Source of the DNA: Mobula hypostoma
Lineage: Eukaryota
Assembly: GCF_963921235.1 (NCBI RefSeq)
Contig: NC_086101.1
Span: 26,970,001 to 27,034,000, forward strand
DNA: 64,000 bases
Direction: 5' to 3'
This document shows positions 38,391 to 62,355 of the stretch, piece by piece. Both the position numbers and the translations under genes were made by a program. The notes under the pieces were generated by a model, which was not told the DNA's origin, ran no database searches, and saw only the letters and a list, made by a program, of their open reading frames with translations. Numbering within the stretch: position 1 is the first letter of the stretch; each line of letters opens with the position of its first letter.

Positions 38391-38569
38391 CCCTGCCTTG
38401 CCTCGTCTCTTGCCTAGCCTCAAGCCTGAATACTCCAGCCTCGTCCTGCCTGCCTGCCATGCCTCATCCTTGCCTAGTTCTGGGGTCCGAGCCACAGGCA
38501 AGACCCGGGTACTGGGTCCTTGTCCAGTCTCTGGCTTGGAGTCTATCCAGCCTCCAGTCTCCAGCATAG

Positions 38570-39340: not shown

Positions 39341-40219
39341 GCCTGAAGACACCAGCCTCGTCCTGCCTGCCAAGCCTCGTCCTTGCCTAGTTCTGGGGTC
39401 TGAGCCAGAGGCAAGACCAGGTACTGAGTCCTTGTCCAGTCTCTAGCTCAGAGTCCAAGCCCGGGATGCTGGCTCTCTTGTCCAGTCTTGTTCCAGGTTC
39501 CTGGTTTTCCTGTCCATGTCCTTGCCCTCAGCCTGTATCCTAGTCCTGTCCCTAGTACTTTAGTGTCTGTGTCTTGCACTTGGGTCCGTTCCCAGCCACT
39601 GCCTTCTGACACAAACAGTCCTTCCAGGTGAGGCAACACTTCACTTGTCAGTCTGTTGGGGTCATCTATTGCATCCAGTGCTCCTGATGTGGCCTCCTCT
39701 ACATCAGTGAAACCCGACGCGGATTGGGGGACCGCTTCTTCGAGCACCTCCACTCTGTCCGTCACAACAGACAGGATCTCCCAGTAGCCACCCACTTCAA
39801 CTCTGCTTCCCATTCACATTCAGATATATCCATACATGGCCTCCTCTACTGCCATGATGAGGCTAAACTCAGGTTGGAGGAGCAACACCTCATACACCGT
39901 CTGGGTAGTCTCCAGCCCCTTGCTATGAACATAGAATTCTCCAACTTCCAGTAATTCCCTCCCCCTCCCTTCCTCTATCCCTATTTCACTCTGCCCCTCC
40001 CCCAGCTGCCTATCACCTCCCTCTTGGTTCCACCTCCTTCTACTACCCATTGTGTTTTCCCCTATTCCTTCTTCACCTTTCCTGCCTATCAGCTCCATGC
40101 TTCCCCCCTCCCCCACCCCTTTGTCTTTCTCCTTACTGATTTTTCACCTGGAACCTACCAGCCTTCTCCTTCCCACTCTCCCCCCACCTTCTTTATAGGG
40201 TCTCTCACCCTTCCCTCTA

Positions 40220-40256
40220 CAGTCCTGACAAGGGTTCCGGCCCGAAACATTGACTG
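40220..40256 (+). ncRNA. Degenerate minimal hammerhead ribozyme of the Penelope terminus (probably inactive)
   Basis: CAGTC CTGACAA GGGTTCCGGCCC GAAA CATT GACTG versus the intact copy at 61551; core CTGACGA and GAAACGTC are mutated. Confidence 0.6.
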
Positions 40257-40449
40257 ATCTTTTCCACGGATGCTGCCCAACCTGCTGAGTTCCTCCAGCG
40301 TGTTGTGAGCGTTATTTAAACTAGCTGACTAGCTGCTAAGGAGCTACTCTATTGCAGACATCCCACCTCTACCGGAAGTTCTGGGAATCTCCCACAAATT
40401 GATGGTGCTACCTCCCTGAAATGAGTTTTTGCAGGGTGGGATGTCTGCT

Positions 40450-40890
40450 TATGTCACTAAGGATTCTAGTAAATTTCTACAGATGTACCATGGAGATCAT
40501 TCTGACCGATCTGATATGAAGACTCCATCGCAGAGGACCAAAACAGGTTCCCTGGAAAGTTATTCTCAGTCAGCTCCATTACGGGCGAATCCCTGTACAC
40601 CATCGGAAGACACCTTCAAAATGCGCTGTCTCATGAGGAACTCTCAGCATCCGGGATAGGCCCTCTTATCATCACTACCATTAACGAGGTGATACAGGAG
40701 CCTGAAGACCGACAGTCAACGTCTTAGCAACATCTTTCCCTCTGCGCCATCAGACTTCTGAGCGGGCAATGAACACATGAACACTGTCTCACCTTTTCTC
40801 TTTCTATTTACTCACTTCATGTTACTTTCAGAATTTTTGTCGCGCACTGATACTCAAAACAACACGTTTGTGATAATAAACCTGATTCTG
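40450..40890 (+). mobile_element. Rex1/Babar LINE, right half and 3' end
   Basis: Continues the 17790-18513 copy (MSLRILVNFYRCTMEIILT-like); ends AATAAACCTGATTCTGATT. Confidence 0.75.
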
Positions 40891-41259
40891 ATTTGGAGGC
40901 TCCTGAAGACAGCGGAATGAGAACTGATTGGAAAAGTGATGATATTTTCGAGTTCTGCAGAAGTGTAGGAAGCAACCGCCCTGTTGTTATCAGTGTATCT
41001 GAAAAAGATTTGGAGAAATGCGCCCCCCAGCAGGTCAGAGACAAGCAATAGTTTACGTCTGTGCGATTGCCTTTGATCTCGAGATAGTGTTGAATGTTAA
41101 TGGTTTGTTTCTTGGTGGGAAGGCGGGGTCGAGAGTCATTTGCTTGAACTTGGCGTTGCAATATTATTTTTCCGTAGTGTGAATCTAGTGTCGAACAGCG
41201 ATCGTATACGGTCAATGAAGTATTTAACTCTTACGTAAATTTAGATAGTCCACTCGCTC

Positions 41260-41268
41260 TTCCCGGAA
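41260..41268 (+). promoter_or_regulatory. GAS (STAT) palindrome TTCCCGGAA overlapping an ETS core CCGGAAG, in a CpG-containing proximal promoter
   Basis: Exact TTCN3GAA match 135 bp upstream of the ATG at 41403; function not demonstrated. Confidence 0.45.
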
Positions 41269-41402
41269 GCACCGAACTACCTGAGCTGCTGCGGAGCTGA
41301 GGTCCATCCCTAAGCCGAGACTTGGACGAGTATCAATACGGCATTTAAACACTCATTCCAGAAACTCAACTTACTCTAACAGTAAACACGGCCTCCGACA
41401 AA

Positions 41403-41469
41403 ATGCCATTGAAAGAAGTTTCTGGGCTGTGCAGCTTCTATCTTTTTACCTACCTCGTTGTTGTTAACG
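41403..41469 (+). CDS. Exon 1 (signal peptide) of an Ig-superfamily receptor
   Basis: AAAATGC start; MPLKEVSGLCSFYLFTYLVVVN-(A); phase-1 donor G|GTAAGA matches the phase-1 acceptor at 42639. Confidence 0.75.
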
Positions 41470-41619
41470 GTAAGAGTTTTCAGAACTAACGATCAGACAA
41501 ACAGTTTGTGTTTCAAGGTTGTTTCAGAATGTATTCAAAGCAACGAATATACTACGTACGTCCGTGTCAGATGTTGGTGGAACTGATATTTAATAAAACC
41601 ACGTCCCGCAGATTGAATA

Positions 41620-41705
41620 AAAAACACATATCGTTGGTGTACGTTCACCAGCAACTTTGATGTGTGTTGCTTGAATTTCCAGCATGTGCAGAATTCCTCG
41701 TGTTT
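41620..41705 (+). mobile_element. 86-bp Penelope-tail insertion with a short inverted 5' piece
   Basis: Matches the Penelope 3' end at 61620-61686; 14-bp TSD CCGCAGATTGAATA at 41606-41619 and 41706-41719. Confidence 0.75.
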
Positions 41706-42387
41706 CCGCAGATTGAATAGTTGGTTTCTGTTTGGATATTAGATTTAAGAGCATAATATAAATGCAGGCTGGTGGAGAAAGGGCGAGACGGTTTTACTAA
41801 CCAGAAAGCGCTTTCAGAGCTGGCATCAGCAGAATGGGTTGTGTTATTTTAATCCAGATCTCTCAAAAACAACCTCCGGGCGGGATCACCGAAGGCTCCG
41901 CAAGCAACTACCTCTCGTCCCAGGAGACCGCCCCTTGGACTCTGCAGGGTACTACACCCCTCTCCCCCCGCCCCCCCCCCCCCACACACACACACACACC
42001 CTTCTGGCTCAGCGGACATAAAACAATATGTGGTGGGTATCATTGAAAAACTAACTTGCAAACTGGTTTAAAAGAGACACATTTGGACAGCTTGTTAGCG
42101 CATTGGCCCGACTGCTGCAGATTCGACCTAAATCAACTCGGCTGTCTGTCGCCAAGCTCGGACGGGGCTGCGGAATCTAAATTCTGGCGTTGTTTCCATC
42201 AGTTACTGCGCAAGGCAGAACAGACTAATCACCACTTGAATGTGTTCTCCCCTAGTGTAATGTTCATATTGAATTTCACAGACGGGCTCTAAGAACAGCC
42301 CGGCGAACCACAGAGCTCAAATTTCCAGTACTGAACGTAAAGGATCAGCAACGTATATTGGAGACGTATTCATATAGAGTGGTTTTT

Positions 42388-42606
42388 ATGAAGACCATGA
42401 CGTGGGAGCAGATTTAAGCCATTTGGCGCATCGAGTCTGCTCCGCCATTCAATCATTGCTGATCCGTTTTGTCCCACCTCCTCAGCCCCACTCCCCGGCC
42501 TTCTCCCCGTCACCTTCGATGCCGTATCCAATTAATAACCTATCAATCTCTGCCTTAAATACACCCAACGGCCTGTCCTCCACAGCTGCCTGTGGTAACA
42601 AGTTCT
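42388..42606 (-). mobile_element. CR1 3' terminal fragment
   Basis: GCCATT...CATCGAGTCTGCTCCGCCATT motif shared with other CR1 3' ends in the window (e.g. 14260-14285). Confidence 0.6.
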
Positions 42607-42638
42607 ATAAATTAAGAGGATTGCTATTTTTCCTTTAG

Positions 42639-43007
42639 CCGCTGTAACACTGAGAATGCATCCGGACCGCCTGACAGGGTCGGTAGGACAGTCTGTTCTC
42701 CTACCGGCCTCCTACACCAACCCAGACTCGGGCGGGTATCTGCGGATCACATGGACCAAGACCGGCACAAGAATTGTAGATTTTCGATGTCCCTCGGACA
42801 GAAACGGCAACTTAGTTGGATGTACCCACACGATTCCCATTGCCGACCACTATAAATATCGGGCCGTGCTTTTTCCAGAGAATGCATCCTTACTGATGAA
42901 AGATTTGCAGACCAGCGACAGCGGGATTTATGAATTATCCATTAGCTGCTCAACGGGAACTGAAAAAGGCAGTTTGTACTTGACCGTGCAGCCGTCTGAT
43001 AGAATGG
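42639..43007 (+). CDS. Exon 2: Ig V-set domain 1 (CD2/CEACAM N-like, no canonical disulfide)
   Basis: Acceptor TTTTTCCTTTAG|, donor G|GTAGGT, 369 bp, phase 1-1; V-set motifs G.SVLLP, ITW, R..LFPENASLL..DLQ.SDSGIY; no stops. Confidence 0.9.
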
Positions 43008-43239
43008 GTAGGTACATTTTCATGATATGAAGTCCTTTTTGCAGTTGTTAGGAAAGTTTTCATTCCGAATCCAGTGACATCCAGACTCAACATTAATCAT
43101 GAGATTTATAACTAGCTTTGTTGAGTGTCCTCTCCTGTACAAGGTTCAGACTTTTTATTTCCGGAATGTCGGCATTATACATATGTTTTTAATCTCTACA
43201 TGTTCTCACCAACTGCAGTCTGATTGTAGTCCATTTACC

Positions 43240-43400
43240 TACCTAGTGAGGGCAGTTTACAATAACCAATCAACAGTGTTTGGGATGCGAGAAGAACCGG
43301 GATCATCCGGGGAGAACCCATGCCCTCACAGGGAGAATGTGCACTCTCCACGCCGGCAGCTCCCGAGCTTGGGACAGAGGCAGTCGCTGTGTCACTGTGT
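43240..43400 (-). mobile_element. HE1/V-SINE-like fragment
   Basis: TTTGGGATGCGAGAAGAACCGG...CCGGGGAGAACCCATGC...ACAGGGAGAATGTGCACTCTCCAC resembles the reverse of the V-SINE core; recognised from memory only. Confidence 0.5.
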
Positions 43401-44109
43401 CGCCCGGTGTTTCCACCGCTCTCTGAATTTCGAGCTTTTGTTCAATTTGCTCTGATGTTTGCTTCCCCTCATGCTGGCTGTGACAAGTACCTACCCCCTA
43501 TTTAAAATGCAATAAATATCGGAATATAGGCATTACCCACGGCCTATTGAACCTGAAACTTCAGAGCGAGACACCCACTTGAAAGTCCTCCTTATCATGG
43601 TGCTCACGACAACCTCCGTGTTTAGTCCGAGCAACAGTGGAAGAACAATCCATTTCTAATTCAGGTGGGTGAGTGACTTGACGGGAAACTACAGCCGGTA
43701 TTTTGCCCTTATGCTTCCTTTCATTATCCACATGGGAGGGAGAGATGGGGTTTTGGGAGGAGCTGTCAGGATAGCCTCAGAAGTGACTGCAGTGGGTTTC
43801 ATAGATAGTAGAGTGGAGCTTCTGCATATCAGCGATGGATACCCCACACAGCCCATTGTCAGTTTTATGTGGTATACTCAGTTGAGTTTCTGTTTATTGC
43901 TGACCTTGTAACGCTGGTCAGGAGGTGATGATAATGTTATTGAATATCAAGAGTACTTGTTTTGGTGTTGGATATGATCACTACCTTTGCAATTTTAAGA
44001 TGTCACTGCTACCTAAAACGTATCTGCTAATGTCCCAATACTTATTGATTTCCCCTCCAACTCCCCCCACTACCACCACCACTGTAGTTCATTTTCCAGT
44101 TATTCTTTG

Positions 44110-45520
44110 AAACCCAGGTAATGTTGAACATCTCTGATATGGGGAGGAAAAATATTCTCCAATAGTCTCGTGAGCCACTCTCCAATCCTCCGGCACCTCA
44201 CCCGTAGACACCGACATTTTAAATATTTCTGCCAGGGCCCCTGCAATTTCAACACTAGTCTCCTTCAAGGTCTGAGGGAACACTCTGTCAGGTCCCGGGG
44301 ATTTATCCACTTTAATTTTCCTCAAGATAGCAAGCACCTCCTCCTTTTCAATCTGTACAGTTTCCATGATCTCACTACTTGTTTCCCTTAATTCCAAAGA
44401 CTTCATGCCAGTTTCCTTAGTAAATACAGACGCAAAAAACCCATTTAAGATCTCCCCCATTTCTTTTGGTTCCGCACATAGCCGACCACTCTGATCTTCA
44501 AGAGGACCAATTTTATCCCTTACAATCTTTTTACTCTTAATATACCTGTAAAAGCTCTTTGGATTATCCTTCACTTTGACTGCCCTCCTGATTTCCTTAA
44601 GTATTTTCTTGCACTTTTTATACTCCTCAAGCACCTTATTTACTCCCTGTTTCCTATACACGTCATACAACTCCCTCTTATTCTTTATCAGAGTTGCAAT
44701 ATCCCTTGAGAACCAAGGTTCCTTATTCCTATTCACTTTGCTTTTAATCCTGACAGGATACAAATTCTGCACTCTCAAAATATCTCCTTTGAAGGCTTCC
44801 CACCTACCGATCACATCCTTGCCAGAGAACAACCTGTCCCAATCCACGCTTTTTAGATCCTTTCTCATTTCTTCAAATTTGGCCTTCTTCCAGTTCAGAA
44901 CCTCAACCCTAGGACCAGATCTATCCTTGTCCATGATCAGGTTGAAACTAATGGTGTTATGATTACTGGAACCAAAGTGCTCCCCTACACAGACTTCCTT
45001 CATTTGTCCTAACTCCTTTCCTAATAGGAGATCCAATATTGCATCCCCTCTAGTTGGTCCCTCGATTCAGAAAACTTTCCTGAACACATTTTACAAACTC
45101 TAAACCATCTGGACCCCTAACAGTATGGGAGTCCCAATCTATATATGGAAAATTAAAATCCCCTACCACCACAACTTTATGTTTCCTGCAGTTGCCTGCT
45201 ATTTCTCTGCAGGTTTGCTCTTCCAATTCTCGCTGACTATTTGGTGGTCTATAATTCAACCCCAATAATGTGGCCATGCCTTTCCTGTTTCTCAGCTCCA
45301 CCCATAAGGACTCAGTAGACAAGCCCTTTAATCTGTCCTGCCTGAGCACTGCTGTAACATTTTCCCTGACAAGCAATGCTACCCGCCCATCTTTCATTCC
45401 TCTGCCTCTATCACATCTGAAACATCGGAACCCTGGAATATTGAACTGCCAGTCCTGCCCCTCCTGTAGCCAAGTTTCACTAATTGCTATAACGTCATAA
45501 TTCCACGTGTCAACCCTGCG
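44110..45520 (-). mobile_element. CR1 LINE ORF2 (endonuclease to the start of RT), truncated
   Basis: ORFs 45050-45532 (YDVIAISETWL...YRPPNS...GDFNFP) and 44089-45036 (KVDKSPGPDRVFP...EVPEDWRVAH). Confidence 0.9.
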
Positions 45521-46024
45521 AGTCAAATACATAAGACCGTCATTGTTTACATTAGTTATACTTTATAAATGAGCGATACAATTATTGTGCTGGTCATTTT
45601 ACTAATATCAGTGTAACGTCAATAATCTCACAGATTTTAATTTATGTTGGAAAGCAGCTTCGACCCAGAAAGCAGAAAGTTCCTGCATTAAGCCTAAAAG
45701 ATCCAAGAACAGCGCTGGGCGGGGCGAAGTGTGAAATATATGAATGGAGAAACAGTTTACAGGGAATATTACGACAGCGTAGAGTCCGTGTACCTAATCA
45801 CACCCTTATATGCTTTTGGAAAGATGTGAAACGCAGAAAATGTTTACTTCATCTGGTTTTGCTCCACGGTTTAAACAATTGATCTATTATTCACAGAGAA
45901 AGAACAATTGGAGATTCTAGAAATTTGTCACGGATTCGGCCTGATTTACCGTGTATTTGCAACTATAATGTTTTATTGCGATAGAGTTACCATATCATGA
46001 AACAATTACCATCTCCACTGTTAG

Positions 46025-46423
46025 GTGCTGTAACACTGACTGTGCATCAGGACCGCATGAATGGAACCGTCGGGCAGTCTGTGCTCCTACCCACCTCTTA
46101 CACCGACCCAGACTCACACGGGTATCTGCGGATCACGTGGACCAAAGCCGGGAGGAGAATTGCAGATTATCGATGCCCCTCAAGCAGAAATGGCACCCTT
46201 GCTGGATGTGCCCAGACCAGGCTCACTGACGATCACTATAAGGGTCGAACTGTGCTTTTCCCGGAGAATGCATCCTTGCTGCTGAGAGATTTGCAGATCA
46301 GCGACAGTGGGATTTATTATTTATCCATCGGCCACTCAGGGGGAACTGAGAGTCGCAGTCTGAATTTGATGGTTCAGCCAGACACCAGTAATAGAACCAG
46401 TTGGTACTCTCAGAAGGAGTGGG
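46025..46423 (+). CDS. Exon 3: Ig V-set domain 2 (paralogue of exon 2); donor at 46399 or 46423
   Basis: Acceptor CTCCACTGTTAG|GT, phase 1; 83/118 aa identical to domain 1 by manual ungapped alignment; two in-phase donors, A|GTTGGT (46399) and G|GTGAGT (46423). Confidence 0.88.
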
Positions 46424-46839
46424 GTGAGTTTGTTAAATTATTCAGAATGTCTTCACTCAGATTGTGTTGTTTGGTAGGTAACAATTGTAGATGCCAACAG
46501 TGATTAGCAAGTGTCAAGTTCAAGATTATTGTCAAATTCAAACGTACCCTGAAAATTTGTTTATTTTTCACAGTTTCATGCCTGTAGGACTTGCTTTAAA
46601 AATTGTTTGGGTTTGTGTTTATTTGCTGAAATACTTTACTATACAGATCTTCAATGTCCTCAGAGATAAACTAGTTTAATTAGAAAATACCGGAAATATT
46701 CATTAACTCAGGCAGCATCTTTGAAGAGGAAAAACTGTGAATGTTTAAAGTTTCATCAGAAAGTTAGAGGTAAAAAAAATGGTGAAGAATTTCATTATTT
46801 ACATCATTTAGATTTTTACCAGCTGGTAATGACTCTCAC

Positions 46840-48978
46840 AAATGTTCAATGGAACAATACCCTAGCAGGGATGACAGTGGAACAGCAATGGCAAGTGTTT
46901 CTGGGAATAATGCGGAAGGTGCAGGATCGGTTCATTCCAAACAGGAAGAAAGATCTTAAGGAGAGTAAGGGGAGGCCGTGGCTGACAAGGGAAGTAATGG
47001 ATCCTATAAAAATAAAAGAGAAGTATAACATAGCAAAGATGAGTGGGAAGCCGAAGGATTGGGAAACTTGTAAAGAGCAACAGAAGGTAATTAAAAAGGC
47101 AATATGTGGAGAAAAAATGAGGTACGAAGGTAAACCAGCTAAGAATATAAAGGAGGATAGTAAAAGCTTCTTTAGGTACGTGAAAAGGAAAAAAATAGTT
47201 AAGACCAAAATTGGGCCCTGGAAGACAGAAGCGGGTGAATTTATTACGGGGAACAAGGAAATGGTGGACGAGTTGAACAGGTACTTTGGATCTGTCTTCA
47301 CTAGGGAAGACACAAACAATCTCCCAGATATAATAGTGGCCAAAAGACCTAGGGTAATGGATGAACTGAAGGAAATTTATATTAGGCAGGAAATGGTGTT
47401 GGATAGGCTGTTGGGTCTGAAGGCTGCTAAGTCCCCGGGACCTGATGGTCTGCATCCCAGGGTACTTAAAGAGGTGGCTTTAGAAATTGTGGATGCATTG
47501 GTAATCATTTTCCAATGTTCTATAGATTCAGGATCTGTTCCTGTGGATTGGAGGGTGGCTAATGTTGTCCCTCTCTTCAAGAAAGGAGGGAGAGAGAAAA
47601 CAGAGAATTATAGACTGGTTAGCCTGACGTCAGTGGTGAGAAAGATGCTGGAGTCAATTATAAAAGATGAAATTATGACACATCTGGATAGCAGTAACAG
47701 GATCGGTCTGAGTCAGCATGGATTTACGAAGGGGAAATCATGCTTGACTAATCTTCTGGAATTTTTTGAGGATGTAACTATGAAAATGGACAAGGGAGAG
47801 CCAGTGGATGTAGTGTAACTGGACTTTCAGAAAGCTTTTGATAAAGTCCCACATAGGAGATTAGTGGGCAAAATTAGGGCACATGGTATTGGGGGCAGAG
47901 TACTGACATGGATTGAAAATTGGCTGGCTGACAGAAAACAAAGAGTAGCGATTAACAGGTCCCTTTCAGAATGGCAGGCAGTGACCAGTGGGGTACCGCA
48001 GGGTTCAGTGCTGGGACCGCGGCTGTTTACAATATATATTAATGATTTAGATGAGGGAATTAAAAGTAACATTAGCAAATTTGCCGATGACACAAAGCTG
48101 GGTGGCAGTGAAACATGTGAGGAGAATGTTATGAGAATGCAGGGTAACTTGGACAGGCTGGGTGAGTGGGCAGATGCATGACAGATGCAGTTTAATGCGG
48201 ATAAGTGTGAGGTTATCCACTCTGGTGGTAAGAACGGGAAGGCAGATTATTATCTAAATGGAGTCAAGTTAGGAAAAGGGGAAGTACAATGAGATCTAGG
48301 TGTTCTTGTACATCAGTCACTGAAAGCAAGCATGCAAGTACAGCAGGCTATGAAAAAAGCTAATGGTATGCTGGCCTTCATAACAAGGGGAATTGAGTAT
48401 AAAAGCAAAGAGGTCCTTCTGCAGCTGTACAGGGCCCTGGTGATACCACACCTGGAGTACTGTGTGCAGTTTTGGTCTCCAAATTTGAGGAAGGGCATTC
48501 TTGCTATTGAGGGAGTGCAGTGTAGGTTCACAAGGTTAATTCCCGGGATGGCGGGACTCTCATATGTCGAAAGATTGGAGCGACTGGGCTTGTATACTCT
48601 GAAATTTAGAAGGCTGAGAGGGGATCTTATTGAAACATATAAGATTATTAAGGAATTGGACACGCTGCAGGAAGGAAGCATGTTCCCGCTGATGGGTGAG
48701 TTCAGAACCAGAGGCCACAGTTTAAGAATAAGGGGTAGGCCATTTAGAACAGAGTTGAGGAAAAATTTTTTCACCCAGAGAGTGGTGGATATATGGAATG
48801 CTCTGCCTCAGAATGCTGTGAAGGCCAAGTCTCTGGATGTTATCAAGAAAGAGATGGATAGAGCTCTGAAAGATAGCGGAATCAAAGGGTATGGGGATAC
48901 TGATTGTGGATGATCAGTCATGATCACAGTGAAAGGCGGTGCTGGCTCGAAGGGCCAAATGGCCTACTCCCGCACCTA
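46840..48978 (+). mobile_element. 5'-truncated CR1 LINE with most of the RT, relatively young
   Basis: ORFs 46721-47818, 47864-48181 (GVPQGSVLGP...KFADDTK) and 48332-48913; (TATTGTC)3 tail at 48957-48978; a few stops. Confidence 0.92.
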
Positions 48979-49549
48979 TTGTCTATTGTCTATTGTCTAA
49001 AAGGTGCTGAATCAAGAATTCTCTGCCCCAGAAAATTGCGGAGGTTAGATCAATAGAAGAACTTCAAGTGATGTAGGTAGGTTTTTGAAGGGTTGGAGAA
49101 TTGAGGGTCAAGGGGAACTCCCAGAGAGGAGAAGGGGCCTGGGATGGATCAGTTATGATCATATTGAATAGGATCTACTTGAAGGGCTGCATGGCCTACT
49201 CCCACTCCTGTTTACCCGTGCTCCTGTGGATTCTGCTCCTCCAATGCACAGAGACAAAAAAGTCTGCAGATGTTGGATTGTGGTGAAAAACAAACAGCTG
49301 GAGGAACTGAGTGGGTCAAACCAGATCTGTGGAGGAAAAGGACTGGACCTACTTCTGTGGAGAAATAGTTTTCAGGGAGGTGAACGAAAACAGTAGTAGG
49401 AGGAGAACTGGTTGGGTCTTTGTTCCAGAAAAAAGTGAAGGGCCCCAAGACCTTGCTGCTGGGGAATTTGGAGGTGTGCAAAGAGAGGTAATTGTTCATT
49501 GGTTCACTACTGTCATGCTGAGGTACTGTGATTACATTTCATTCAGCCA

Positions 49550-50050
49550 AATCAGAGTCAGGTCTAATAGCACCGACATACGTTGTGAAATTTGTTGACT
49601 TAGCAGCAGCAGTACAATGCAATACATGATAAATATAGAAATAAATAAATAAATGATTTACAGTGTGTGTGTGCGTGTATATATATATAATAGGTAAATT
49701 AAGAATAATAGTGCAAAAACAGAAATAAAACAGTGGTGAGGTTGTGTTCATGGATTCAATGTCCATTTAGAAATCGGATGGCAGAGGGGAAGAAGCTGTT
49801 CCTGAATCGCTGAGTGAATCCCATACCTAAGTTCATCACAACATTGAGGTAGTACAAAAGAAAACAAAAATAGAGAATATAGATTATAGCTTTACTGTCA
49901 CAAGGAAAATGCAATGCAAGTTGACTGATAAAGTTCAAGGGCCATCGTGAGGTGAATTGAGAGACCAAGAGTTCATCTTTATCATTAAAGAGGTCCATAT
50001 GAGAGCCATATCACAGCAGGGTGGAAGCTGCCATTGAGCTTGCTGGAACA
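49550..50050 (-). mobile_element. Two Rex1/Babar 3'-end fragments
   Basis: ORF 49756-49998 ends GFTQRFRNSFFPSAIRFLNG; AATAAA-type 3' UTR; includes (GT)/(AT) microsatellite. Confidence 0.55.
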
Positions 50051-51169
50051 CTGAACATGAAGATAAGGCAGGTAAGGCCAGGGAATTGGAAGTTGTAAAA
50101 TTAGAGGGTGCATTAGGTGATGTCCATAGATGTTGCTCGATCTGATGAGCTCCTCCAGCAGTCTGTTTTTTTTTCCCCTGTTATTTACACCACATATTGA
50201 CAACTCACTTTCACAATGCACCTTGCTGTCACCATCCCCACTATGACACCCCCCTTTGTTTTCCTTCCTCACCCTCTCCCTCCCTCCCTCCTTCAACCCT
50301 CTTTTACACTCCCGAGTGTCCTCAGTCCTTTCCACCCTCCTTGCCCATTCTTGCCCTTCTGCCACGTCCAGTTGACAGAATTCCCTCATCTGGGGGTAGT
50401 TGATGGGAAAGTGTGCAGAATGAAATGTGTTAGGACAGGATTAGTATGTGCAAAACTATGTGCTTCATGGACAGCCAGTGGCCTTATTACAGTGCTGTAT
50501 ATATTTGGGAACAAATCTCTCCACCTTCGCTAATGGGATAGATCTCACTGGGTCTGGGCCAGCATCTGACCTCCCCACACACGGTCACCCATCCGCACCC
50601 ACTGGCCCTCTGACTCTCTCTGACCCACTGCACTCAGGATTCAGACAGCATAGGACCTACAGGCCTTCCACTGAGTCGCAGTGCACGTCCTCGGCTGTTG
50701 ACAAAAGCCAGGTCAACAGCTTCATCTCTGGTCAAAACTGGAAGGATTTGTATTGAACCTTTGAAACATTCTTAACATATTAAACCTGACGCAAGTAATT
50801 TTAAAAATGAAAAGCATGTGAGGAACAACTTAAACAGTATAAGATTAATTGCCACAAATAACTGCAAGGCTGACATTTGCTTTAACTTTCACCTTCGAGC
50901 CAGGAATGTTGCAAACCTTTGTCTTTGCACCCTGCAAAACACCCTTTGAGTGAAGATTGAGATCAAGATTGAAAAACAGTGATAGGTTCTATTTATTCAT
51001 CTTACTTTTAATAAAACTTCATAATATTATAGAGTAAAGCCTTCTGGCCTTTGAAGTTTCTACAGATTCAGAAGCAACTTAGCAGAAGTTCTATTAGCAA
51101 ACCAATGCCAGCATGGTTTCCTCAACTGGAAATCTTGTCTGACAGTTTTTTAAAAAAATTCTTGAGGAA

Positions 51170-52040
51170 ATAAGATGTGGCACAGAAGAGTCATAGGATT
51201 TTATTTATTTGGATTTTCAGAGGCCTTTGAGGCTGCCAAACAAGATAAGAGCCCATGGTATTATGTACAGGAAAGATCCTAGCAAATTCAGAAGATTGGC
51301 TGACTGGCAGAAGGCAAAGAGTGGGGAGAAGAGGGGCCATTTCTGGTTAGCTGCTGGTGACCAGTGATAACCCACAGAGGTCTGCTACTTTTCATGTTAT
51401 AAGTTAATGATCTAGACGGTGGAATTTGGCTTTGTGACTAAGTTTTCAGATGATACAAAGATAGGTAGAGGGCAGGTAGTGTTGAGGAAGTAGGAAGTCT
51501 GAAGAAGGATTTAGATAGATTAGGAGAATGAGCAAAAATTGGAAGACAGAATAGTGTGTAGGGGTGTGCATGGTCATGCACTTTGGTAGAAGAAAAAAGG
51601 TGTAGACTATTTTCTAAATGGGGCAAATTCAGAAATCAGAGGTTCAAAGGAACTTGGGGGACCTAGTGCAGGTTAACTAGCAGATTGAATTGGTAGTAAG
51701 GAAGGCAAATGCATGGATGGAGTGGACACGGGGTAAATGTTTCCAACAGTGGGAGAGGATAGGACCAGAGATCTCTGACACAGAATAGGAGGATGTCCCT
51801 TTAGAACAAGATGAGATATTTCTTTCGCCAGAGGGTGGTGAATCTGTGGAATTCATTGCTAAAGATGGCTTTGGATGCCAAGTCATTGGTATGGTTAAAG
51901 CAGAGGTTGATAGATTCTTGATTAGTAATGCCATCAAATGTTACCTGGAGAAGGCAGGTGGATGAGGTTGAGTGGAAAAATAAATCAGCCAGGTTTGAAT
52001 GGCAGAGCAACCTCTGTTCCCATGTCTTATGGTCTTATCG
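51170..52040 (+). mobile_element. Degenerate CR1 RT to 3' end
   Basis: Decayed YLDFQ, KIRAHG, KFSDDTK and FRQRVVNLWNSL motifs with deletions; TCTTATGGTCTTAT tail. Confidence 0.7.
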
Positions 52041-52179
52041 TTTTCTGGTATATTAGTCAATGGGAAGCCATTAATTCCATTATTAATGCATCGGAAAGTT
52101 ATCTACACTGAAGCTTCTGGGATGGATGTACTGAAATGATAATTAGTATCTGCCATTTCTCTCTTCACATCTTGGACAG

Positions 52180-52281
52180 ATACAGACAATGGGCCATTGC
52201 TGGGAATTGGAATTAACCTTCGATACATTGGACTTGTTGTTTACGTTATCTTCCTCTATTTGATCGTGAAATCCCATGGAG
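52180..52281 (+). CDS. Candidate transmembrane exon of the Ig receptor
   Basis: Polypyrimidine acceptor TTTCTCTCTTCACATCTTGGACAG|, donor G|GTAAGC, 102 bp, phase 1-1; encodes TDNGPLLGIGINLRYIGLVVYVIFLYLIVKSHG. Confidence 0.72.
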
Positions 52282-53049
52282 GTAAGCAGGACTGCTGTGA
52301 CACAGTCTCCAGTACACTCTGTGTTCACTGTTGCCTTCAAATAGATCACTGACAGCCTACGTTCAAACAAATGCTCTTCTGTAGATCACAGTAATTAATT
52401 GAAGGTTTATACCTTTGTTCAAATTGTGCTCATGAAACTGACATGAATGTTCTTGTTCATGGTTCAGCATTGCCCAATCTTAGTTGTCCCTCATACTGGG
52501 TAAAACAGTAGTGTGATTTTAACCAAGCTGGTCAAATGAAAAACCCAAGGATTGGAAAGTATGCCCACTGCACACACTGCTCAAAACCTTATTCCATTAA
52601 ATTCAAAAGAGAATAAGATCAGCAAAGATGAACAATTGGGATTCTGCCCAATCCTATTGCTTCCCCAATATTCAGGTAAGATTACAATCTCTGATAAATG
52701 TAAGACAGTAAGTATTTCACAAATATCAATGCTATGCATTAACTATACAGATAAAAATGAAATAATAATTCTGCACAATCCTGATGTTTTCCTTTAATCA
52801 TTATTCAAGAATCTTAGAAGCCTTGCAATTCCGAGATATTTTCTCTCCTACTGAACGCCAGGTCTCATCACACAGTTTAAATGACCAGTAACTGCCATCA
52901 GTGCAAAGCAGTCTACCTCATGGTGTGCTTGACACAGAGGTGTTGTTAAAAATGTGATATTTGATCAGATAATGACCTGTGAAAAAGGGCTGCAGTATCA
53001 GATCTGGAACTACAGTGGCATGCAGTTCTAAGTATTTCTCTTAAGGTGT

Positions 53050-55143
53050 CTTCTTCTTCATGTGCCTTGCGTGTTACACGCTTGGGCGATCATTGCTCTC
53101 CACATTGAATGATCCCTCACAGCGCCAATGATATCTCATACACTTAGATCTGTTAGTTCTTTCACAGTGTTCATATATTTTCTTCTTTGCCTTCCTCTTC
53201 TCTGTTTCTCAGGCATGTGGCCGTGTAATGTAAGGCATTCAATTTCTCCCTTTCTGATGACGAGGCCCAGGAATTTAAGTTTCCTCTCATTTAATGTTCT
53301 CATTAAAGATCTTTTTGTATGGGCACGTTGGAGTACTGTCTCATTAGTTACCCTATCTCTATATGATATTTTCAGCATTCTTCTAAGAAACCACATTTCT
53401 GTTGCTTCTAAGTTTCTTTGGAGTTCTGGTGTTATAGTCCATGTTTCGGAAGCATACAGCAAGATTGACCAGATGTAACATTTTAGTAGCCTAAGCCTTC
53501 TTGTCATAGAAATGTGTCTGTTGGTAAAAATGGGTTTCAGTTTTTGGAAGTTGGTTTTGGCAATGGCAATTCTTCTTTTTATTTCTGCTTTACTTCTAGC
53601 ATCTTGTGATATAAAGCTACCAAGATAATTAAAGGTGGACTTTTGTTCAATCTCTTGGTTACCAATGTACAATTGGCAGTTGGGAGTATCCTGTTGTTTT
53701 GATATTACCATACATTTGTTTTTTTTACAGTTGATGGTTAGACCAAAATCTGCACTTGTTTGTACTACTTTGTCTAGGAGGATTTGTAGGTCTTCTGCCG
53801 CACTTGCTATTAGGGTGGTATTGTCTGCATATCGTATATTGTTGATGTTAACACCTCCAATTTTTATCCCATTAGGTCTTCTATTTCTCTGAGAATCATT
53901 TCACTGTAGATATTAAATAACTCCGGTGAGGCAACGCATCCCTGTCTAAATCCCTCTTTGAACTTTAGTCCAACTGCTTATATTATCATCAATTTTTACC
54001 GCTGCCGTTTGATTCCAATATAAATTTTGAAGCAGTTGTTGGTCCCTTCCATCAATGTTTATTTGAGCGAGAATTTGAAATAATTTTTCAGGTTGCACTT
54101 TGTCCAATGCTTTAGTGAAATCAATAAAACATAAAAAGACATCATTTTGATATTCAATTGCCCTTTCTGAAAGCATCTGTAGTATGAAAATTGCGTTCCT
54201 AGTTCCTCTATCCTCAATAAACCCATATTGCAGTTTAGAAGCTTCTGGTCTTAGCTTGTTTTTAATTCAACTCAGAACAACTCTCAACAAAATCTTTATT
54301 ATGTGACTCATAAGACTGATTGTTCTATGATTTTCACAGTCAATAGTTCCAGGAACTTTTGGCAGAATTATAGATACTGATTTCAAGAGATCGTCAGGCA
54401 ATACACCAGACTCATATATGCCATTACAGAGTTCAAAAAGAATATCTATGCCCAGATCTTTTAGGGCTTGTATCCTTTCCACTGAAATTTCATCAGGTCC
54501 AGTGGCTTTACCATGTTTCATGCTTTTCATTGCTTTAGTTATTTCTTCTTTGGTAATAGGTGGGCCAGAATTAGGGTGTTTAATATCTGGGGGTTCCCCT
54601 CTATTATCTTCAAACAGCTGCTCTATATACCGAATCCACCTCTCACATACTTTATCTGGATCTGTTAGTATGAATCTGTCTGCTGATCTTATGCATCCTG
54701 TAGAAGAGGTTTTCTTAATTCCAGTAATTTCCTTAATTTTCTTGTGCCTTTCTTTGCTGTTGTTAATATGGCCTTCTACTTCATTGCATTTTTGATTCAA
54801 CCACTCTTCCTTTGCAATATTGAACAACTGTCTGGTCTGTCTGTCTGGCTGTCTGTATTGCACTTCACTATTCTTTGCTAACCTTCTCTGTTCCATCAGA
54901 TCTAGAATTTCTTGGGATATCCAGCCCTCGTTGGTGTGTTGGATTTCTTGTACTGGGATTATCTCCTCTGCTGATTGCTGTATAGCATATTTAAATCTGT
55001 CCCAAAAAGATGTTGTTTCATTTTTGTTAAGGTGTTCTTCTACAGTTGTTTTGAATTGTTGCTTAAGTTCTCCCAACATATACTTCTTTCTCTTTTTTCC
55101 CTACGTTTCAGTTTCTTTAATTTTGTTTTAATGGTAGCTATTA
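53050..55143 (-). mobile_element. 5'-truncated RTE-clade LINE
   Basis: ORFs 54267-55079 (KATGPDEI...NHRTISLMSH), 53946-54176 and 53136-53711 (FNYLGS...LLKCYIWSILLYASETW); (GAA)n tail; 9-bp TSD TTAAGGTGT at 53041-53049 and 55144-55152. Confidence 0.88.
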
Positions 55144-56149
55144 TTAAGGTGTAATAATTTTAATGCAAGGTATGTTGATCAAGACTGTGTGTCCTCTTCA
55201 TTTATTTATAATCTTTTCTGGACCTGTGTATCCATATCATCTCCAATTGTTCATGAAGAATGTGTCAACCTATCATCTTGAACTCAACTTACCTTTCTGA
55301 TGGAAGTGTTCTGCTTAGGGAGTTTAGGAACATTTCCAAGTTGGGGTGTATGCATCTTGGAGGGGGTGTTTGCATTGAACCCTTGCGCTTGCCTGACATG
55401 GCACTGGTTTTGAAATGCCCAAATTAGGTACCACAGTTCACTTTAGCAAGTTGTGCACACTGCAGCCACGGTGCACCAGTGCCGGAGGGAATGAATGTTT
55501 AGGCAGATGGATGGGATGCTAATTAAGTGGCCTGATTTTTCCAGGATGGTGCTCCTGGAGTATTATTGGTGAACACTCAGCAGTGCAGAGGGGTGTATTC
55601 TATCATGTTTCTGACCATGCTTTGTAGACGATGGAAAGATTGTGGGAGGTTAGAAGAGAGCCAGCCACTGTTCCTCTCTTGCACCTACAGTATTAATGTG
55701 CTTTGTCCGGTTTCATTTCTTGTCAATGGTTGTAGGCTCAGGGAGATAACAATGAATCATGACCTAGAAACATTTAAAAAAAAGGCTTTTCCTTTCAGGT
55801 TGCAAACGAGCTCAAGTGCAAAGAGAAACGCTAAGTGCTCAAGATCAACGTGGGGAACTTTGTGAAAAGGTAAAGAGATTGAGTTCCCTACTGTTTGGTT
55901 TCTATTAACAATTCCCTGACTGCTTTCTCAGCTCTGCTGAACCAATACTCCTCTCCTCCTTTGGGAATAATGTCCTCACGGGGCAACACAAGCATTTGTG
56001 AGGGAGATGTAAAAATAACTTTGCTAGTTGAAGTGAATATTGTTTGTGCTAAATTCTTTTGGAATCTGGGGAAAGTTTATTAATTGCAATTTGTATTTTC
56101 TTAACCTTGGTTATAGTTATTAACCTTAAGTATAACTTGTATTTATTTA

Positions 56150-57148
56150 ACCTCTCTGTGTAATTAGTACCGCAGATATCTAATCAGCCAATCATGTGTC
56201 AGCAACTCAATACGTAAAAGCATGCAGACATGGTCAAGAGGTTCAGTCGTTGTTCAGACCAAACATCAGAATGGGGAAGAAATGACTTTGCCTGTGGAAT
56301 GATTGTTGGCGTCAGAGGGGGTTGTTTGAGTGTCTTAGAAACTGCTGATCTCCTGGGGTTTTCATGCACAGCAGTCTCTAGAATTTACAGAGAATAGTGT
56401 GCATAACAGAGAGCGCTCAGTAAACGCACTCCTTACATGTGAATTTATACACACACACACACACCACACACACACATTGCCTTGTCGTTCTGCTGTCACT
56501 GTGCTGCCTGCAGTGTCTTCCTCAGTTTCAAATCAGGCTGATGCATTAGGCTTGCTTCATGCTGCCTTTCCTGCCATATACAGTGGAATATTACATTTCT
56601 TTAGTGATGTAAATGTGTGCATGTTGTTTGTACACTGTGTTTAAGGTAGATACAGTACTTCTGTTTATTTTGCAACAGGATTATAATTACGTTATGGGGT
56701 GCATCATATTCTAATTCATGTGTAGTCTTAAATTAACTTTATGGGTAAGTAAAGATGGTAATAAACAGAACTCTTTGCTCTTAGTGGGAGGGAGAGAGAC
56801 CAGGACTGCCAGGAGTTCAGAGTGAACAAAAATAGTAGGGAGCTATATCAGTTAGATATATATTGGCGGTTTCCTTTTCACTATTTTCATTAAATTTTGT
56901 CAGTTTGATTTTTGACACACTTAAGAAACACTCTTGCACTAAAGTGCTAAATGACTCCAGCCATTGTTTTGTTAGGCCATAACCCATTGACAGGAAGGTG
57001 ACAATATCTCAAATAACCACGTGTTACAACAGCGGTGTGCTCAAGAGCACGTCTGAATGCACAACATGTCACACCCTGAAGTCGGTGGGCTACAGCAGCA
57101 GAGGCCACGGCAGGTTTCACGCCTGTGCCTAATAAAGTAGCTACTGAG
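56150..57148 (+). mobile_element. Non-autonomous Tc1-derived element in two pieces (~56150-56400 and ~56950-57148) with unrelated sequence between
   Basis: HTH-region remnants (GMIVGVR...SVLETADLLGFS; RKVT.SQITTCYN...SECTT..TL) and a right-TIR-like CCTAATAAAGTAGCTACTGAG. Confidence 0.5.
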
Positions 57149-61588: not shown

Positions 61589-61967
61589 TACCTCTTCCTA
61601 TAGATGCTGCCTGGCCTGCTGTGTTCACCAGCAACTTTTATGTGTGTTGCTTGAAATTCCAGCATCTGCAGATTTCCTCGTGTTTGAGTTTATATGTTTG
61701 GCTTCCAATTATTCTTCAGGCAAGGACAAATCATAGTCACTTTACAAGCAGGATAGATCCACAGAGATTAAAACTAGCTCATGATTTTACACCACACTAT
61801 ATCCAACCATACTAAACATTGTAAAATGCCGACGTCTCAAATCATGTCCCATCCCTGAATACGTGAACTAAACAGCACAACTACATCCACTATATTAAAA
61901 AAACAACACAAATATAACAGGGACCAAACCTTAAAAATAGGTCTATAATAAAATAGGCTTCACTGGA

Positions 61968-62130
61968 NNNNNNNNNNNNNNNNNNNNNNNNNNNNNNNNN
62001 NNNNNNNNNNNNNNNNNNNNNNNNNNNNNNNNNNNNNNNNNNNNNNNNNNNNNNNNNNNNNNNNNNNNNNNNNNNNNNNNNNNNNNNNNNNNNNNNNNNN
62101 NNNNNNNNNNNNNNNNNNNNNNNNNNNNNC
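61968..62130. other. Assembly gap (163 N)
   Basis: Run of N. Confidence 1.
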
Positions 62131-62186
62131 GCGTGTGGGTGTGTGCGCGTGTGTGTGTGCGCGTGTGTGTGTGTGCGCGTGTGTGT

Positions 62187-62217
<31 letters not shown>

Positions 62218-62236
62218 CGCGCGTGTGGGTGTGTGC

Positions 62237-62273
<37 letters not shown>
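62131..62273. repeat. (GT)n/(GC)n compound microsatellite adjoining the gap
   Basis: Read directly; alternating purine-pyrimidine tract. Confidence 0.95.
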
Positions 62274-62274
<1 letters not shown>

Positions 62275-62355
62275 CATTCCCGTGTGTGATGTGCAATGTT
62301 TTAAAAAAAGGAAGAATCTTTGGATTATCCAGAGTTACAGTATGTTCAGCTAATA

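What the first reader, a model, noticed from the sequence alone, without database searches (positions are those of the whole stretch)
41403..52281. Unusual Ig-superfamily receptor: tandem V domains lacking the B-F disulfide but with a CX10C loop, and no C2 domain found
Exons with concordant phase-1 junctions give leader-V-V-TM. Both V domains replace the canonical cysteines (SVLLP[A/T]SY; DSGIY[E/Y]LSI), as CD2/CD58 and CEACAM N domains do. Both also carry C-X10-C in the C'-C'' region (RCPSDRNGNLVGC; RCPSSRNGTLAGC), which probably forms a substitute disulfide on the ligand-binding face. V1 has an extra unpaired Cys in the FG loop (SISCSTG), a possible dimerisation site. The domains are 70% identical (83/118), with differences clustered just after the loop and in the FG region, as expected for diversifying ligand contacts. 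CD2/SLAM and CEACAM proteins normally follow the V domain with C2 domains. I cannot assign an orthologue, so this may be a lineage-specific family.
Basis: partly seen in the sequence, partly recalled or inferred. Interest (0 to 1): 0.7.

Follow-up and report, generated by a model that had tools for sequence, protein, structure and literature searches.

The report
Two-V-domain ray immune receptor gene
This is a real, transcribed devil-ray gene for a surface receptor with two antibody-like V domains that lack the usual internal disulfide and instead carry a conserved cysteine pair in their most variable loop. It belongs to an unnamed receptor family found in chimaeras, sharks, rays, amphibians, turtles, a crocodilian and birds.

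Summary
The leader, V1, V2 and TM exons sit at the stated coordinates with phase-1 GT/AG junctions. Spliced contigs from two studies join leader→V1 and V1→V2. I added a cytoplasmic exon at 55799-55869; the last exon lies beyond the window. Both V domains have Ala/Thr and Leu at the canonical Cys positions and carry C-X10-C at the C'/C'' hairpin. They are 83/118 identical.

The interpretation needs correcting in three places.
- **Not lineage-specific.** Orthologues with the same V-V-TM build exist in three other rays. The wider family, with 1-6 tandem V domains, includes a chimaera, sharks, rays, amphibians, turtles, a crocodilian and birds. No paper I could search describes it.
- **The cysteine pair is a family hallmark.** Of 226 domains, 153 have both cysteines, 50 have neither and 23 have one. 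It brackets the hypervariable segment.
- **The extra V1 cysteine is confined to devil rays.** The nearest orthologue also lacks the second loop cysteine in V1.

The membrane Arg is conserved. The tail stops just before the tyrosine motif that single-V paralogues carry. The gene is therefore most likely an adaptor-coupled, activating-type member, but this is inferred.

Nearest named relatives are HEPACAM, VSTM5, CEACAM N domains and JAML; membership in any is unproven. The scan noted similar Cys-less, Arg-TM receptors elsewhere in this genome.

The parts
41403..41469 (+). Exon 1: start codon and signal peptide (MPLKEVSGLCSFYLFTYLVVVN-), ends in phase 1
   Evidence: Sequence read. Spliced contig joins 41468->42638 (GT..AG) in run X2. 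78% identical to the N-terminus of Hypanus sabinus P0239.
42639..43007 (+). Exon 2: V1, membrane-distal V-set domain without the canonical cysteines
   Evidence: Pfam V-set E 1.2e-9. AlphaFold pLDDT 89.3, V-type strand order. 96.6% identical to M. birostris P0151 V1.
42788..42823 (+). V1 C-X10-C segment (Cys50...Cys61), C'-C'' hairpin
   Evidence: The two positions co-occur across 226 family domains. This is the start of the family's most variable region.
42947..42949 (+). V1 Cys103, extra cysteine at the F strand/FG loop border
   Evidence: Also present in M. birostris, but His in Hemitrygon and Hypanus.
46025..46423 (+). Exon 3: V2, membrane-proximal V-set domain plus a short stalk (…QPDTSNRTSWYSQKEW)
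   Evidence: Pfam V-set E 2.5e-9. Spliced joint 43006->46024 (GT..AG) in runs X1 and X2. A 539-nt contig stops matching exactly at the donor, 46423.
46174..46209 (+). V2 C-X10-C segment (Cys50...Cys61), with an N-G-T sequon inside the loop
   Evidence: Conserved in the V2 of all three orthologues.
52180..52281 (+). Exon 4: transmembrane segment LLGIGINLRYIGLVVYVIFLYLIV with Arg (52221-52223) in the membrane
   Evidence: 35/35 identical to P0151. Arg-Tyr is conserved in one TM class of the family.
55799..55869 (+).
   Evidence: tblastn with P0151 residues 285-308, 92% identity. AG/GT borders read.

Best explanation
The region holds an intact, transcribed devil-ray gene. It encodes a type I membrane protein: signal peptide, V1, V2, a transmembrane helix with a buried arginine, and a short tail without tyrosine.

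It belongs to an old, unnamed multigene family of V-only Ig receptors. The family's V domain has hydrophobic residues where the B-F disulfide normally sits. Two cysteines 10-11 residues apart flank the C'-C'' hairpin. They most likely form a disulfide that staples the base of the family's hypervariable, CDR2-like loop.

The two V exons come from an old exon duplication that predates the split of devil rays and whiptail stingrays.

Other family members have either an uncharged TM with ITIM/ITSM-like tyrosine motifs, or the Arg-TM plus a tail tyrosine motif. This gene keeps the Arg-TM but its tail ends just before that motif. It therefore most likely signals only through an acidic-TM ITAM adaptor of the FcR-gamma/DAP12/CD3-zeta type, as the activating-type counterpart of inhibitory relatives.

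What is shown: gene structure, transcription, family membership and the cysteine pattern. What is inferred: the disulfide, adaptor coupling, immune function and the ligand (unknown).
For: - **Gene structure and transcription.** Exons and frame. Spliced contigs leader->V1 and V1->V2 from two studies, with no depth in unique intron bins.
- **Orthologues.** The same V-V-TM(Arg)-short-tail build occurs in M. birostris (95-97% identical), H. akajei and H. sabinus.
- **Selection.** dN/dS between V1 and V2 is 0.37, dS is 0.52, and homology is confined to the exons.
- **Timing of the duplication.** In the tree, V1s and V2s each form supported clades across the four rays (100/97 and 96/99).
- **Family cysteine pattern.** The canonical B/F positions are V/T/A/I and V/L/I in about 220 of 226 domains. 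For Cys50/Cys61, 153 domains have both, 50 have neither and 23 have one; most of the 'one only' cases are C-X11-C or C-X5-C offsets.
- **Hypervariability.** The highest entropy is at residues 51-68.
- **TM and tail classes.** The Arg-TM class ('AK[VI]RY') and the uncharged-TM class with T[PQ]YAEL and VEYATV are tabulated. The orthologue tail ends at ...STSNPTE, where paralogues continue ...STSNPAVLYSEI.
- **Bird relatives.** They carry TxYxx[VI] motifs.
Against: - No measurement of the disulfide.
- M. birostris V1 has Phe at position 61, so the bond is dispensable in at least one V1.
- Many Arg-TM paralogues also carry ITIM-like tails. Arg-TM therefore does not by itself mean 'activating' in this family.
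- The last exon of this gene lies outside the window. Its tail is known only from orthologues, and the Hypanus model ends differently.
- V2->TM->cytoplasmic splicing rests on orthologous gene models, not on reads I laid.
- Tissue of expression is unknown.
- I did not check whether ITAM adaptors exist in rays.
Confidence: 0.6

Rival explanations
1. It is a true member of the CEACAM family: an N-domain-only CEACAM, comparable to CEACAM3/4 or to the multi-N-domain frog Ceacams and rodent PSGs, sitting in the ray's CEACAM cluster.
For: - The family profile hits CEACAM N domains at E about 1e-9. The shared stretch is ...FPENASLL...DSG.Y.L.
- The V domain is cysteine-less, and relatives carry ITIM/ITSM tails.
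- The Hemitrygon isoform P0014 places a CEA-like N-C2 module (E 3e-18 to CEA) in front of a family V domain.
- NCBI names some relatives CEACAM-like.
- CEACAM homologues have been reported in cartilaginous fish, and frog Ceacams with several N domains are known (PMC5112662, PMC3628338).
Against: - CEACAM matches cover only the E-F half of the domain. JAML and CAR score as well or better over the full length. HEPACAM and VSTM5 lead the structural search.
- Intact family genes exist in chicken and ducks, where a 2026 survey found no complete CEACAM genes (PMC13278318).
- The chicken member lies on chromosome 4 next to a TMLHE-type gene. LIPE, BCL3 and the other markers of the CEA locus named in PMC5112662 and PMC3628338 did not appear among its immediate neighbours.
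Confidence: 0.2
2. It is a cell-adhesion or junctional molecule of the HEPACAM/CTX-JAM type, JAML-like with two V domains. It acts by homophilic or heterophilic adhesion, and the TM arginine is structural rather than an adaptor docking site.
For: - JAML, a V-V-TM receptor, is the best solved match by sequence profile (E 4.8e-12) and by two-domain fold (E 3.5e-14).
- The HEPACAM V domain is 27-28% identical in the structural alignment.
- NCBI names the Hypanus orthologue 'hepatic and glial cell adhesion molecule-like'.
Against: - JAML keeps the canonical cysteines and this protein does not. The TM-score for the two-domain match is only 0.35.
- HEPACAM has a C2 domain and a long tail (established knowledge). 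This gene has neither.
- The family is multigene. It has ITIM/ITSM-type tails, a conserved TM Arg class and a hypervariable loop. That pattern is typical of immune receptor families.
Confidence: 0.12
3. It is a signalling-dead or decaying copy. Loss of the tail tyrosine motif, an odd number of cysteines in V1 and TE-swollen introns would mark a gene on its way out, or a decoy that binds ligand without signalling.
For: - The tail stops before the motif kept in paralogues.
- V1 has three cysteines here, and a different pair in M. birostris.
- Introns carry LINE insertions.
Against: - The frame is open through five exons and the gene is spliced and transcribed.
- The architecture, the TM Arg and the truncated tail are conserved in rays of two families.
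- dN/dS is 0.37.
Confidence: 0.06
4. V1 and V2 are alternative (mutually exclusive) exons or belong to separate genes.
For: Both exons start with near-identical residues and have the same phase, so either could follow the leader.
Against: - Contigs in two runs join V1 directly to V2 at GT..AG. One contig carries leader, V1 and V2 together.
- Three independent NCBI gene models have both domains.
- No canonical (GT..AG) leader->V2 joint was seen. The one listed joint into V2, 41661->46075 (GT..GG, 20-nt side), starts in a repeat inside intron 1.
Confidence: 0.02

Closest known systems
HEPACAM / HEPACAM2 (V domain)
   Same: Among the top structural matches in Swiss-Prot models, with the highest sequence identity of any named protein (27-28% over about 120 residues). 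NCBI's pipeline names several relatives HEPACAM-like or HEPACAM2-like. From memory, the HEPACAM V domain also lacks the B-F disulfide.
   Different: HEPACAM proteins have one or two C2 domains and long cytoplasmic tails, and are conserved orthologues. This gene has two V domains, no C2, an Arg in the TM and a short tail, and belongs to a multigene cluster. I know of no C'-C'' cysteine pair in HEPACAM (from memory, not tested).
CEACAM N domains (CEACAM1/3/5/6; Xenopus multi-N Ceacams)
   Same: Cysteine-less V domain. Near-identical E-F strand motif including the N-A-S sequon. ITIM/ITSM-bearing and activating-type members in one family. Tandem N domains occur in frog Ceacams (PMC5112662).
   Different: Similarity is limited to half of the domain. 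The family is present in fowl, which reportedly lack intact CEACAM genes. The chicken member lies beside a TMLHE-type gene, with none of the CEA-locus markers among its immediate neighbours. No C'-C'' cysteine pair was seen in the CEACAM alignments.
JAML (AMICA1)
   Same: Two tandem V-set domains followed directly by a TM. Best solved-structure match by profile and by two-domain fold.
   Different: In the profile alignment the canonical B- and F-strand positions of both JAML domains are Cys. Domain orientation differs (TM-score 0.35, rmsd 16 Å). JAML has no TM arginine and is not a paired-receptor family (established knowledge).
VSTM5
   Same: Top Swiss-Prot structural hit and top protein-language-model neighbour. 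It is a small V-plus-TM protein.
   Different: Only 19% identity. Single V domain. The VSTM5_C tail domain was not detected in this family (the model may be missing from the Pfam copy used).
Adaptor-coupled activating Ig receptors (e.g. LILRA, NKp46, OSCAR, CHIR-A; KIR2DL4 and NKp44 as Arg/Lys-TM plus ITIM examples)
   Same: A basic residue in the outer part of the TM, a short tail without motifs, and relatives with inhibitory tails.
   Different: Those receptors use C2- or canonical V-type domains with the normal disulfide. No sequence relationship was shown. Adaptor binding was not tested here.

Membership tests
Immunoglobulin V-set domain | Match to the V-set profile and A'GFCC'C''/ABED strand topology | tested here: met
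   Pfam PF07686 E 1e-9 for each exon, above the gathering score. AlphaFold model with C' and C'' strands, pLDDT 89. Foldseek hits to V domains.
Immunoglobulin V-set domain | Canonical B-F intradomain disulfide | tested here: not met
   Ala/Thr at the B position and Leu at the F position. The same holds for about 220 of 226 family domains. CD2, CEACAM N and similar domains are accepted V-set members without it.
CEACAM family | N domain most similar to CEACAM N domains over its whole length | tested here: inconclusive
   The profile hits CEACAM1/5/6/8 at E 1e-9 to 1e-5, but only over profile positions about 65-110. JAML and CAR align over the full length with equal or better scores.
CEACAM family | Location in the conserved CEA locus (LIPE, BCL3, CNFN, PAFAH1B3... 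as used in PMC5112662 and PMC3628338) | tested here: inconclusive
   The ray locus could not be tested: the window holds no other gene. The chicken relative lies on chromosome 4 next to a TMLHE-type gene and a V-C2 gene, which argues against the CEA locus for the bird branch only.
CEACAM family | ITIM/ITSM or ITAM-like cytoplasmic motif | tested here: not met
   No tyrosine in the cytoplasmic exon in the window or in the M. birostris and H. akajei tails. Paralogues do carry such motifs.
HEPACAM family | V domain followed by C2 domain(s) and a long cytoplasmic tail | tested here: not met
   V2 is spliced or modelled directly to the TM. No C2-like exon in the window. The orthologue tail is about 35 residues.
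CD2/SLAM family | Cysteine-less V domain followed by a C2 domain; ITSM tail in SLAM receptors | tested here: not met
   There is no C2 and no ITSM in this gene. Pfam Receptor_2B4 is only borderline (21.7 bits against a cut-off of 21, with no single stretch passing). SLAMF5 and CD48 hits are at E 1e-5.
JAML | Two V-set domains, each with the canonical disulfide | tested here: not met
   The V-V-TM architecture is shared, but the canonical cysteines are absent here.
Adaptor-coupled activating receptor (functional class) | Basic residue within the TM helix | tested here: met
   Arg in ...GINLRYIGLVV.... Conserved in orthologues and in one TM class of the family.
Adaptor-coupled activating receptor (functional class) | Physical and functional association with an ITAM adaptor | not testable with these tools
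   Needs co-expression and co-precipitation with ray FcR-gamma, DAP12 or CD3-zeta, and an Arg mutant.
Unnamed Cys-less V family with C'-C'' cysteine pair (this report) | Hydrophobic residues at the B/F Cys positions, two Cys 10-11 apart after strand C', and an invariant ...R...N.S.L...D..(G).Y core | tested here: met
   Alignment A1: invariant R74, N81, S83, L85 and D93. Cysteine counts. phmmer E 1e-30 to 1e-124 to elasmobranch members and 1e-28 to 1e-103 to bird and frog members.

The most novel reading that the evidence does not exclude
The gene is a member of a previously unrecognised, roughly 450-million-year-old vertebrate immunoreceptor family. The family is present in chimaeras, sharks, rays, amphibians, turtles, crocodilians and birds. 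No mammal or teleost appeared among 117 named hits.

Its V domain has replaced the core B-F disulfide with a C'-C'' disulfide that staples a hypervariable, CDR2-like ligand-binding hairpin. The family has repeatedly built ectodomains from V domains alone (1-6 in tandem), with inhibitory (ITIM/ITSM) and Arg-TM adaptor-coupled forms. It may lie in a conserved neighbourhood with CEACAM/HEPACAM-like V-C2 genes. An unverified scan note places RPS18, an extended-MHC gene in humans, beside a paralogue 70 kb downstream.
Probability: 0.35. Interest if true: 0.6.

Novelty: new variant of a known kind. Interest (0 to 1): 0.42.

Why it matters
Cartilaginous fish are the oldest living group with antibodies, T-cell receptors and MHC, but their innate-type Ig receptors are largely uncharted.

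This gene gives a clean, transcribed example of a receptor family that public annotation lists only as 'uncharacterized' or under four different borrowed names: HEPACAM-like, HEPACAM2-like, CEACAM-like and A33-like. The family has a simple diagnostic signature: no B-F disulfide, plus a C'-C'' cysteine pair around the hypervariable loop.

The family is shared with birds, including chicken LOC771657. Its function could therefore be studied in a tractable model. It also offers a natural experiment on how a V domain stays folded without its core disulfide.

If adaptor coupling is confirmed, it adds a further paired activating/inhibitory system at the base of jawed vertebrates.

Tried and rejected
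- **Last coding exon.** A motif scan for the orthologue's C-terminus downstream of 55869 found nothing. The M. birostris gene spans 34 kb, so the exon should lie beyond base 64000. The N run at 61968-62129 was left alone.
- **Runs on record as RNA.** None was listed. The runs used are labelled 'RNA?' and one 'probably DNA'. I rely on GT..AG-exact joints and empty intron bins, not on the label. Only one read-laying run was allowed, so V2->TM and TM->cytoplasmic joints were not examined.
- **Cys50-Cys61 distance.** Model coordinates are not returned, so only secondary-structure positions could be used.
- **Fold searches with V1 alone.** They return generic V domains (PD-L1, CAR, B7-H4) and do not discriminate families.
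- **VSTM5_C tail domain.** Not detected in the family.
- **Link to the published frog Ceacam set.** Accession and motif searches in the supplements of PMC5112662 found nothing. The X. tropicalis locus was withheld.
- **Locus fetches.** Sawfish loci show only neighbouring multi-Ig genes within 10 kb.
- **Literature.** Searches for a description of the family, or for ITAM adaptors in cartilaginous fish, gave nothing usable.
- **Other checks.** Rfam found no RNA family in 40000-56500. Duplication of intron flanks was rejected: homology stops at the exon borders.

Full report
**What is in the sequence.**
- All have AG/GT borders and phase-1 junctions. Joined, they give one open frame of 312 residues.
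It encodes GCKRAQVQRETLSAQDQRGELCEK and matches residues 285-308 of the closest orthologue.
- The last coding exon was not found in the window. The orthologous gene in Mobula birostris spans 34 kb from V1, so that exon should lie beyond base 64000.
- The introns hold LINE fragments (44089-45532 on the minus strand, 46721-48913 on the plus strand).
- The rest of the window holds only repeats and the 18-kb minisatellite at 20.5-38.4 kb.

**Is it transcribed as one chain?**
- I laid four public runs on 41403-47402. One contig joins 41468->42638. Contigs in two runs from two studies join 43006->46024. Both joints are GT..AG-exact.
- One 580-nt contig carries the leader, all of V1 and the first 80 nt of V2.
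- A 539-nt contig stops matching exactly at the V2 donor (46423) and continues for 276 letters.
- Unique intron bins have zero depth in all runs, while exon bins are covered.
- The runs are only guessed to be RNA, but this pattern is what spliced RNA gives.
- No canonical leader->V2 joint was seen. The one listed joint into V2 (41661->46075, GT..GG, 20-nt side) starts in a repeat in intron 1.
- NCBI gene models in M. birostris (P0151), Hemitrygon akajei (P0001) and Hypanus sabinus (P0239) have the same V-V-TM-short-tail order. V2 runs straight into the TM.
- Two of these models miss the leader exon and start at a Met inside V1.
- No C2-like exon is detectable with relatives that carry C2 domains.

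**The V domains.**
- Both exons pass Pfam's V-set threshold.
- Alignment to lambda light chains puts Ala23 (Thr in V2) at the B-strand Cys. Alignment to DSCAM puts Leu99 at the F-strand Cys.
- Each domain has Cys50 and Cys61 (C-X10-C). In the AlphaFold model of V1 (pLDDT 89.3), Cys50 ends strand C' (43-52) and Cys61 precedes the short C'' (62-63). The pair therefore flanks the C'-C'' hairpin. I could not measure the distance, because coordinates are not returned.
- At the nucleotide level they are 78% identical, with dS 0.52, dN 0.19 and dN/dS 0.37. Similarity stops at the exon borders.
- This is an old duplication under overall purifying selection.
- Differences cluster at residues 62-68 and 102-110, but also in strand A/A'.

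**The family.**
- An exhaustive HMMER search with V2 found 330 proteins at E<=0.001.
- Named hits are from a chimaera, sharks, a sawfish, a skate and rays, and from frogs, a caecilian, turtles, an alligator and many birds, including chicken LOC771657.
- None of the 117 named hits in the length-limited search is a mammal or a teleost.
- Their names are 'uncharacterized' or borrowed: HEPACAM-like, HEPACAM2-like, CEACAM-like, A33-like.
- Members have one to six tandem V domains of this type.
- Across 226 domains the canonical Cys positions are V/T/A/I and V/L/I in all but a handful.
- The two loop cysteines are both present in 153 domains, both absent in 50, and single in 23. Most of the singles are C-X11-C or C-X5-C variants that the fixed-column count misses. 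This co-occurrence is what a disulfide pair predicts, although the domains are not independent samples.
- Bird members have C-S-L-x-x-G-G-A-P-x-x-C plus a second flanking pair.
- Among 34 elasmobranch domains the most variable stretch is residues 51-68 (2.2-2.4 bits). Next is FG/G (1.4-1.5), against 0.6-0.9 in strands B, C, E and F.
- So the cysteine pair brackets the start of the family's hypervariable, CDR2-like region.

**Two caveats on the cysteines.**
- The M. birostris orthologue has Phe at V1 position 61.
- Cys103 of V1 is found only in the two devil-ray sequences. It is His in Hemitrygon and Hypanus. It is therefore not a conserved dimerisation site.

**History of the two-domain gene.** In a maximum-likelihood tree, the V1s of the four rays form one clade (100/97) and the V2s another (96/99). 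The single V of a sawfish gene with an inhibitory-type tail (P0004) is sister to the V1 clade (95/87). The duplication therefore predates the split of devil rays and whiptail stingrays.

**Membrane and tail.**
- The TM reads LLGIGINLRYIGLVVYVIFLYLIV, with Arg at 52221-52223. It is identical in M. birostris and is ...IHLRY... in the two stingrays.
- Elasmobranch members fall into two classes.
  - One has an 'AK[VI]RY...' TM with the same Arg-Tyr. It often also has a tail motif such as VLYSEI, followed by TEYGRI-type motifs.
  - The other has an uncharged TM with T[PQ]YAEL and VEYATV.
- The orthologues of this gene end at ...STSNPTE. That is exactly where Arg-TM paralogues continue ...STSNPAVLYSEI....
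- The gene thus keeps the Arg but has lost the tyrosine motif.
- By analogy with receptors that use a TM Arg or Lys to dock FcR-gamma, DAP12 or CD3-zeta (established knowledge), I infer adaptor-coupled, activating-type signalling.
- This is the weakest link. Arg-TM members with ITIM-like tails show that the Arg alone does not define 'activating' here. I also did not verify the adaptors in rays.

**Comparison with known families.**
- The family profile's best solved match is JAML, a V-V-TM receptor (E 4.8e-12). Next come pIgR, CEACAM N domains (about 1e-9, but only over the E-F half, which shares ...FPENASLL...DSG.Y.L...), B7-H3, CAR, TIM-3, SLAMF5 and CD48.
- The two-domain model (pLDDT 81.9) also hits JAML first, but with TM-score 0.35.
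- Against Swiss-Prot models the top hits are VSTM5 and HEPACAM. HEPACAM has the highest identity, 27-28%.
- A language-model search also points to VSTM5 clusters.
- None of these gives orthology. Each fails a defining feature: a C2 domain, canonical cysteines, tail motifs or full-length similarity.

**Genomic neighbourhood.**
- A Hemitrygon isoform (P0014) puts a CEA-like N-C2 module (E 3e-18 to CEA) in front of a family V domain.
- Sawfish and chicken members sit beside V-C2-type genes. The family therefore lives among CEACAM/HEPACAM-like genes.
- Against CEACAM membership proper, intact members occur in chicken and ducks, where a 2026 survey found no complete CEACAM genes (PMC13278318).
- The chicken gene lies on chromosome 4 at 10.9 Mb next to a TMLHE-type gene (TIGR02410, E 3e-27).

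**Verdict.**
It is wrong on lineage restriction and on the extra cysteine.
- The gene is an ordinary-looking but undescribed kind of Ig receptor: a new variant within the CEACAM/HEPACAM/CD2-like, cysteine-less V world.
- My confidence is high (>0.9) for the gene model and family assignment, about 0.65 for the disulfide, and about 0.5 for adaptor-coupled activation.
- Earlier scan notes on this genome report similar Cys-less V receptors with Arg-TM elsewhere, one 70 kb downstream next to RPS18. I could not check these.

Noticed in passing
window 20540-38409: An 18-kb GC-rich (about 70%) minisatellite of 31/36/67-nt units with strong C-over-G skew. It ends about 3 kb upstream of the receptor's start codon and is already the subject of another finding of this scan.
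   Followed up: partly
window 44089-45532 (-) and 46721-48913 (+): LINE fragments fill the V1-V2 and V2-TM introns (endonuclease and reverse-transcriptase ORFs of 160-365 aa). Contigs of these repeats are very abundant in all four runs laid.
   Followed up: no
window 41642-41705 and 42403-42602: Short interspersed repeat pieces in intron 1 with extreme summed contig depth (up to about 220,000) and many loose ends on both sides. There is no Rfam match. Related flanking words recur at 58580 and 61606.
   Followed up: partly
P0151 (Mobula birostris) residue 56 of V1, equivalent to window 42821-42823: The closest orthologue has Phe where the window has the second loop cysteine of V1. It keeps Cys50 and Cys103, so the cysteine set of V1 differs between two devil-ray sequences.
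   Followed up: partly
P0151 and P0001 N-termini, compared with window 41403-41469: NCBI models for M. birostris and H. akajei start at a Met inside V1 and lack a signal peptide. The leader exon seen here, and in the Hypanus model, appears to have been missed.
   Followed up: partly
P0014 residues 337-408, P0008 residues 151-220: The TM-plus-juxtamembrane region of inhibitory-type paralogues matches Pfam TMEM51 (PF15345). The match is above the gathering score in P0014 (27.9 against 25.5 bits). Unexplained.
   Followed up: no
P0014 (Hemitrygon akajei, 'contactin rig-6-like isoform X1'): A CEA-like N-C2 module is modelled upstream of a family V domain, a TM and an ITIM/ITSM-like tail. This is either a real V-C2-V isoform or a fusion of neighbouring genes.
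   Followed up: partly
L004 (chicken chromosome 4, 10.94-10.96 Mb): Chicken LOC771657, a two-V member of the family, lies between a TMLHE-type gene and a gene that starts with a Cys-less V followed by a C2 domain.
   Followed up: partly
window 61943-62396: A (CA)n-type microsatellite surrounds the N run at 61968-62129.
   Followed up: no
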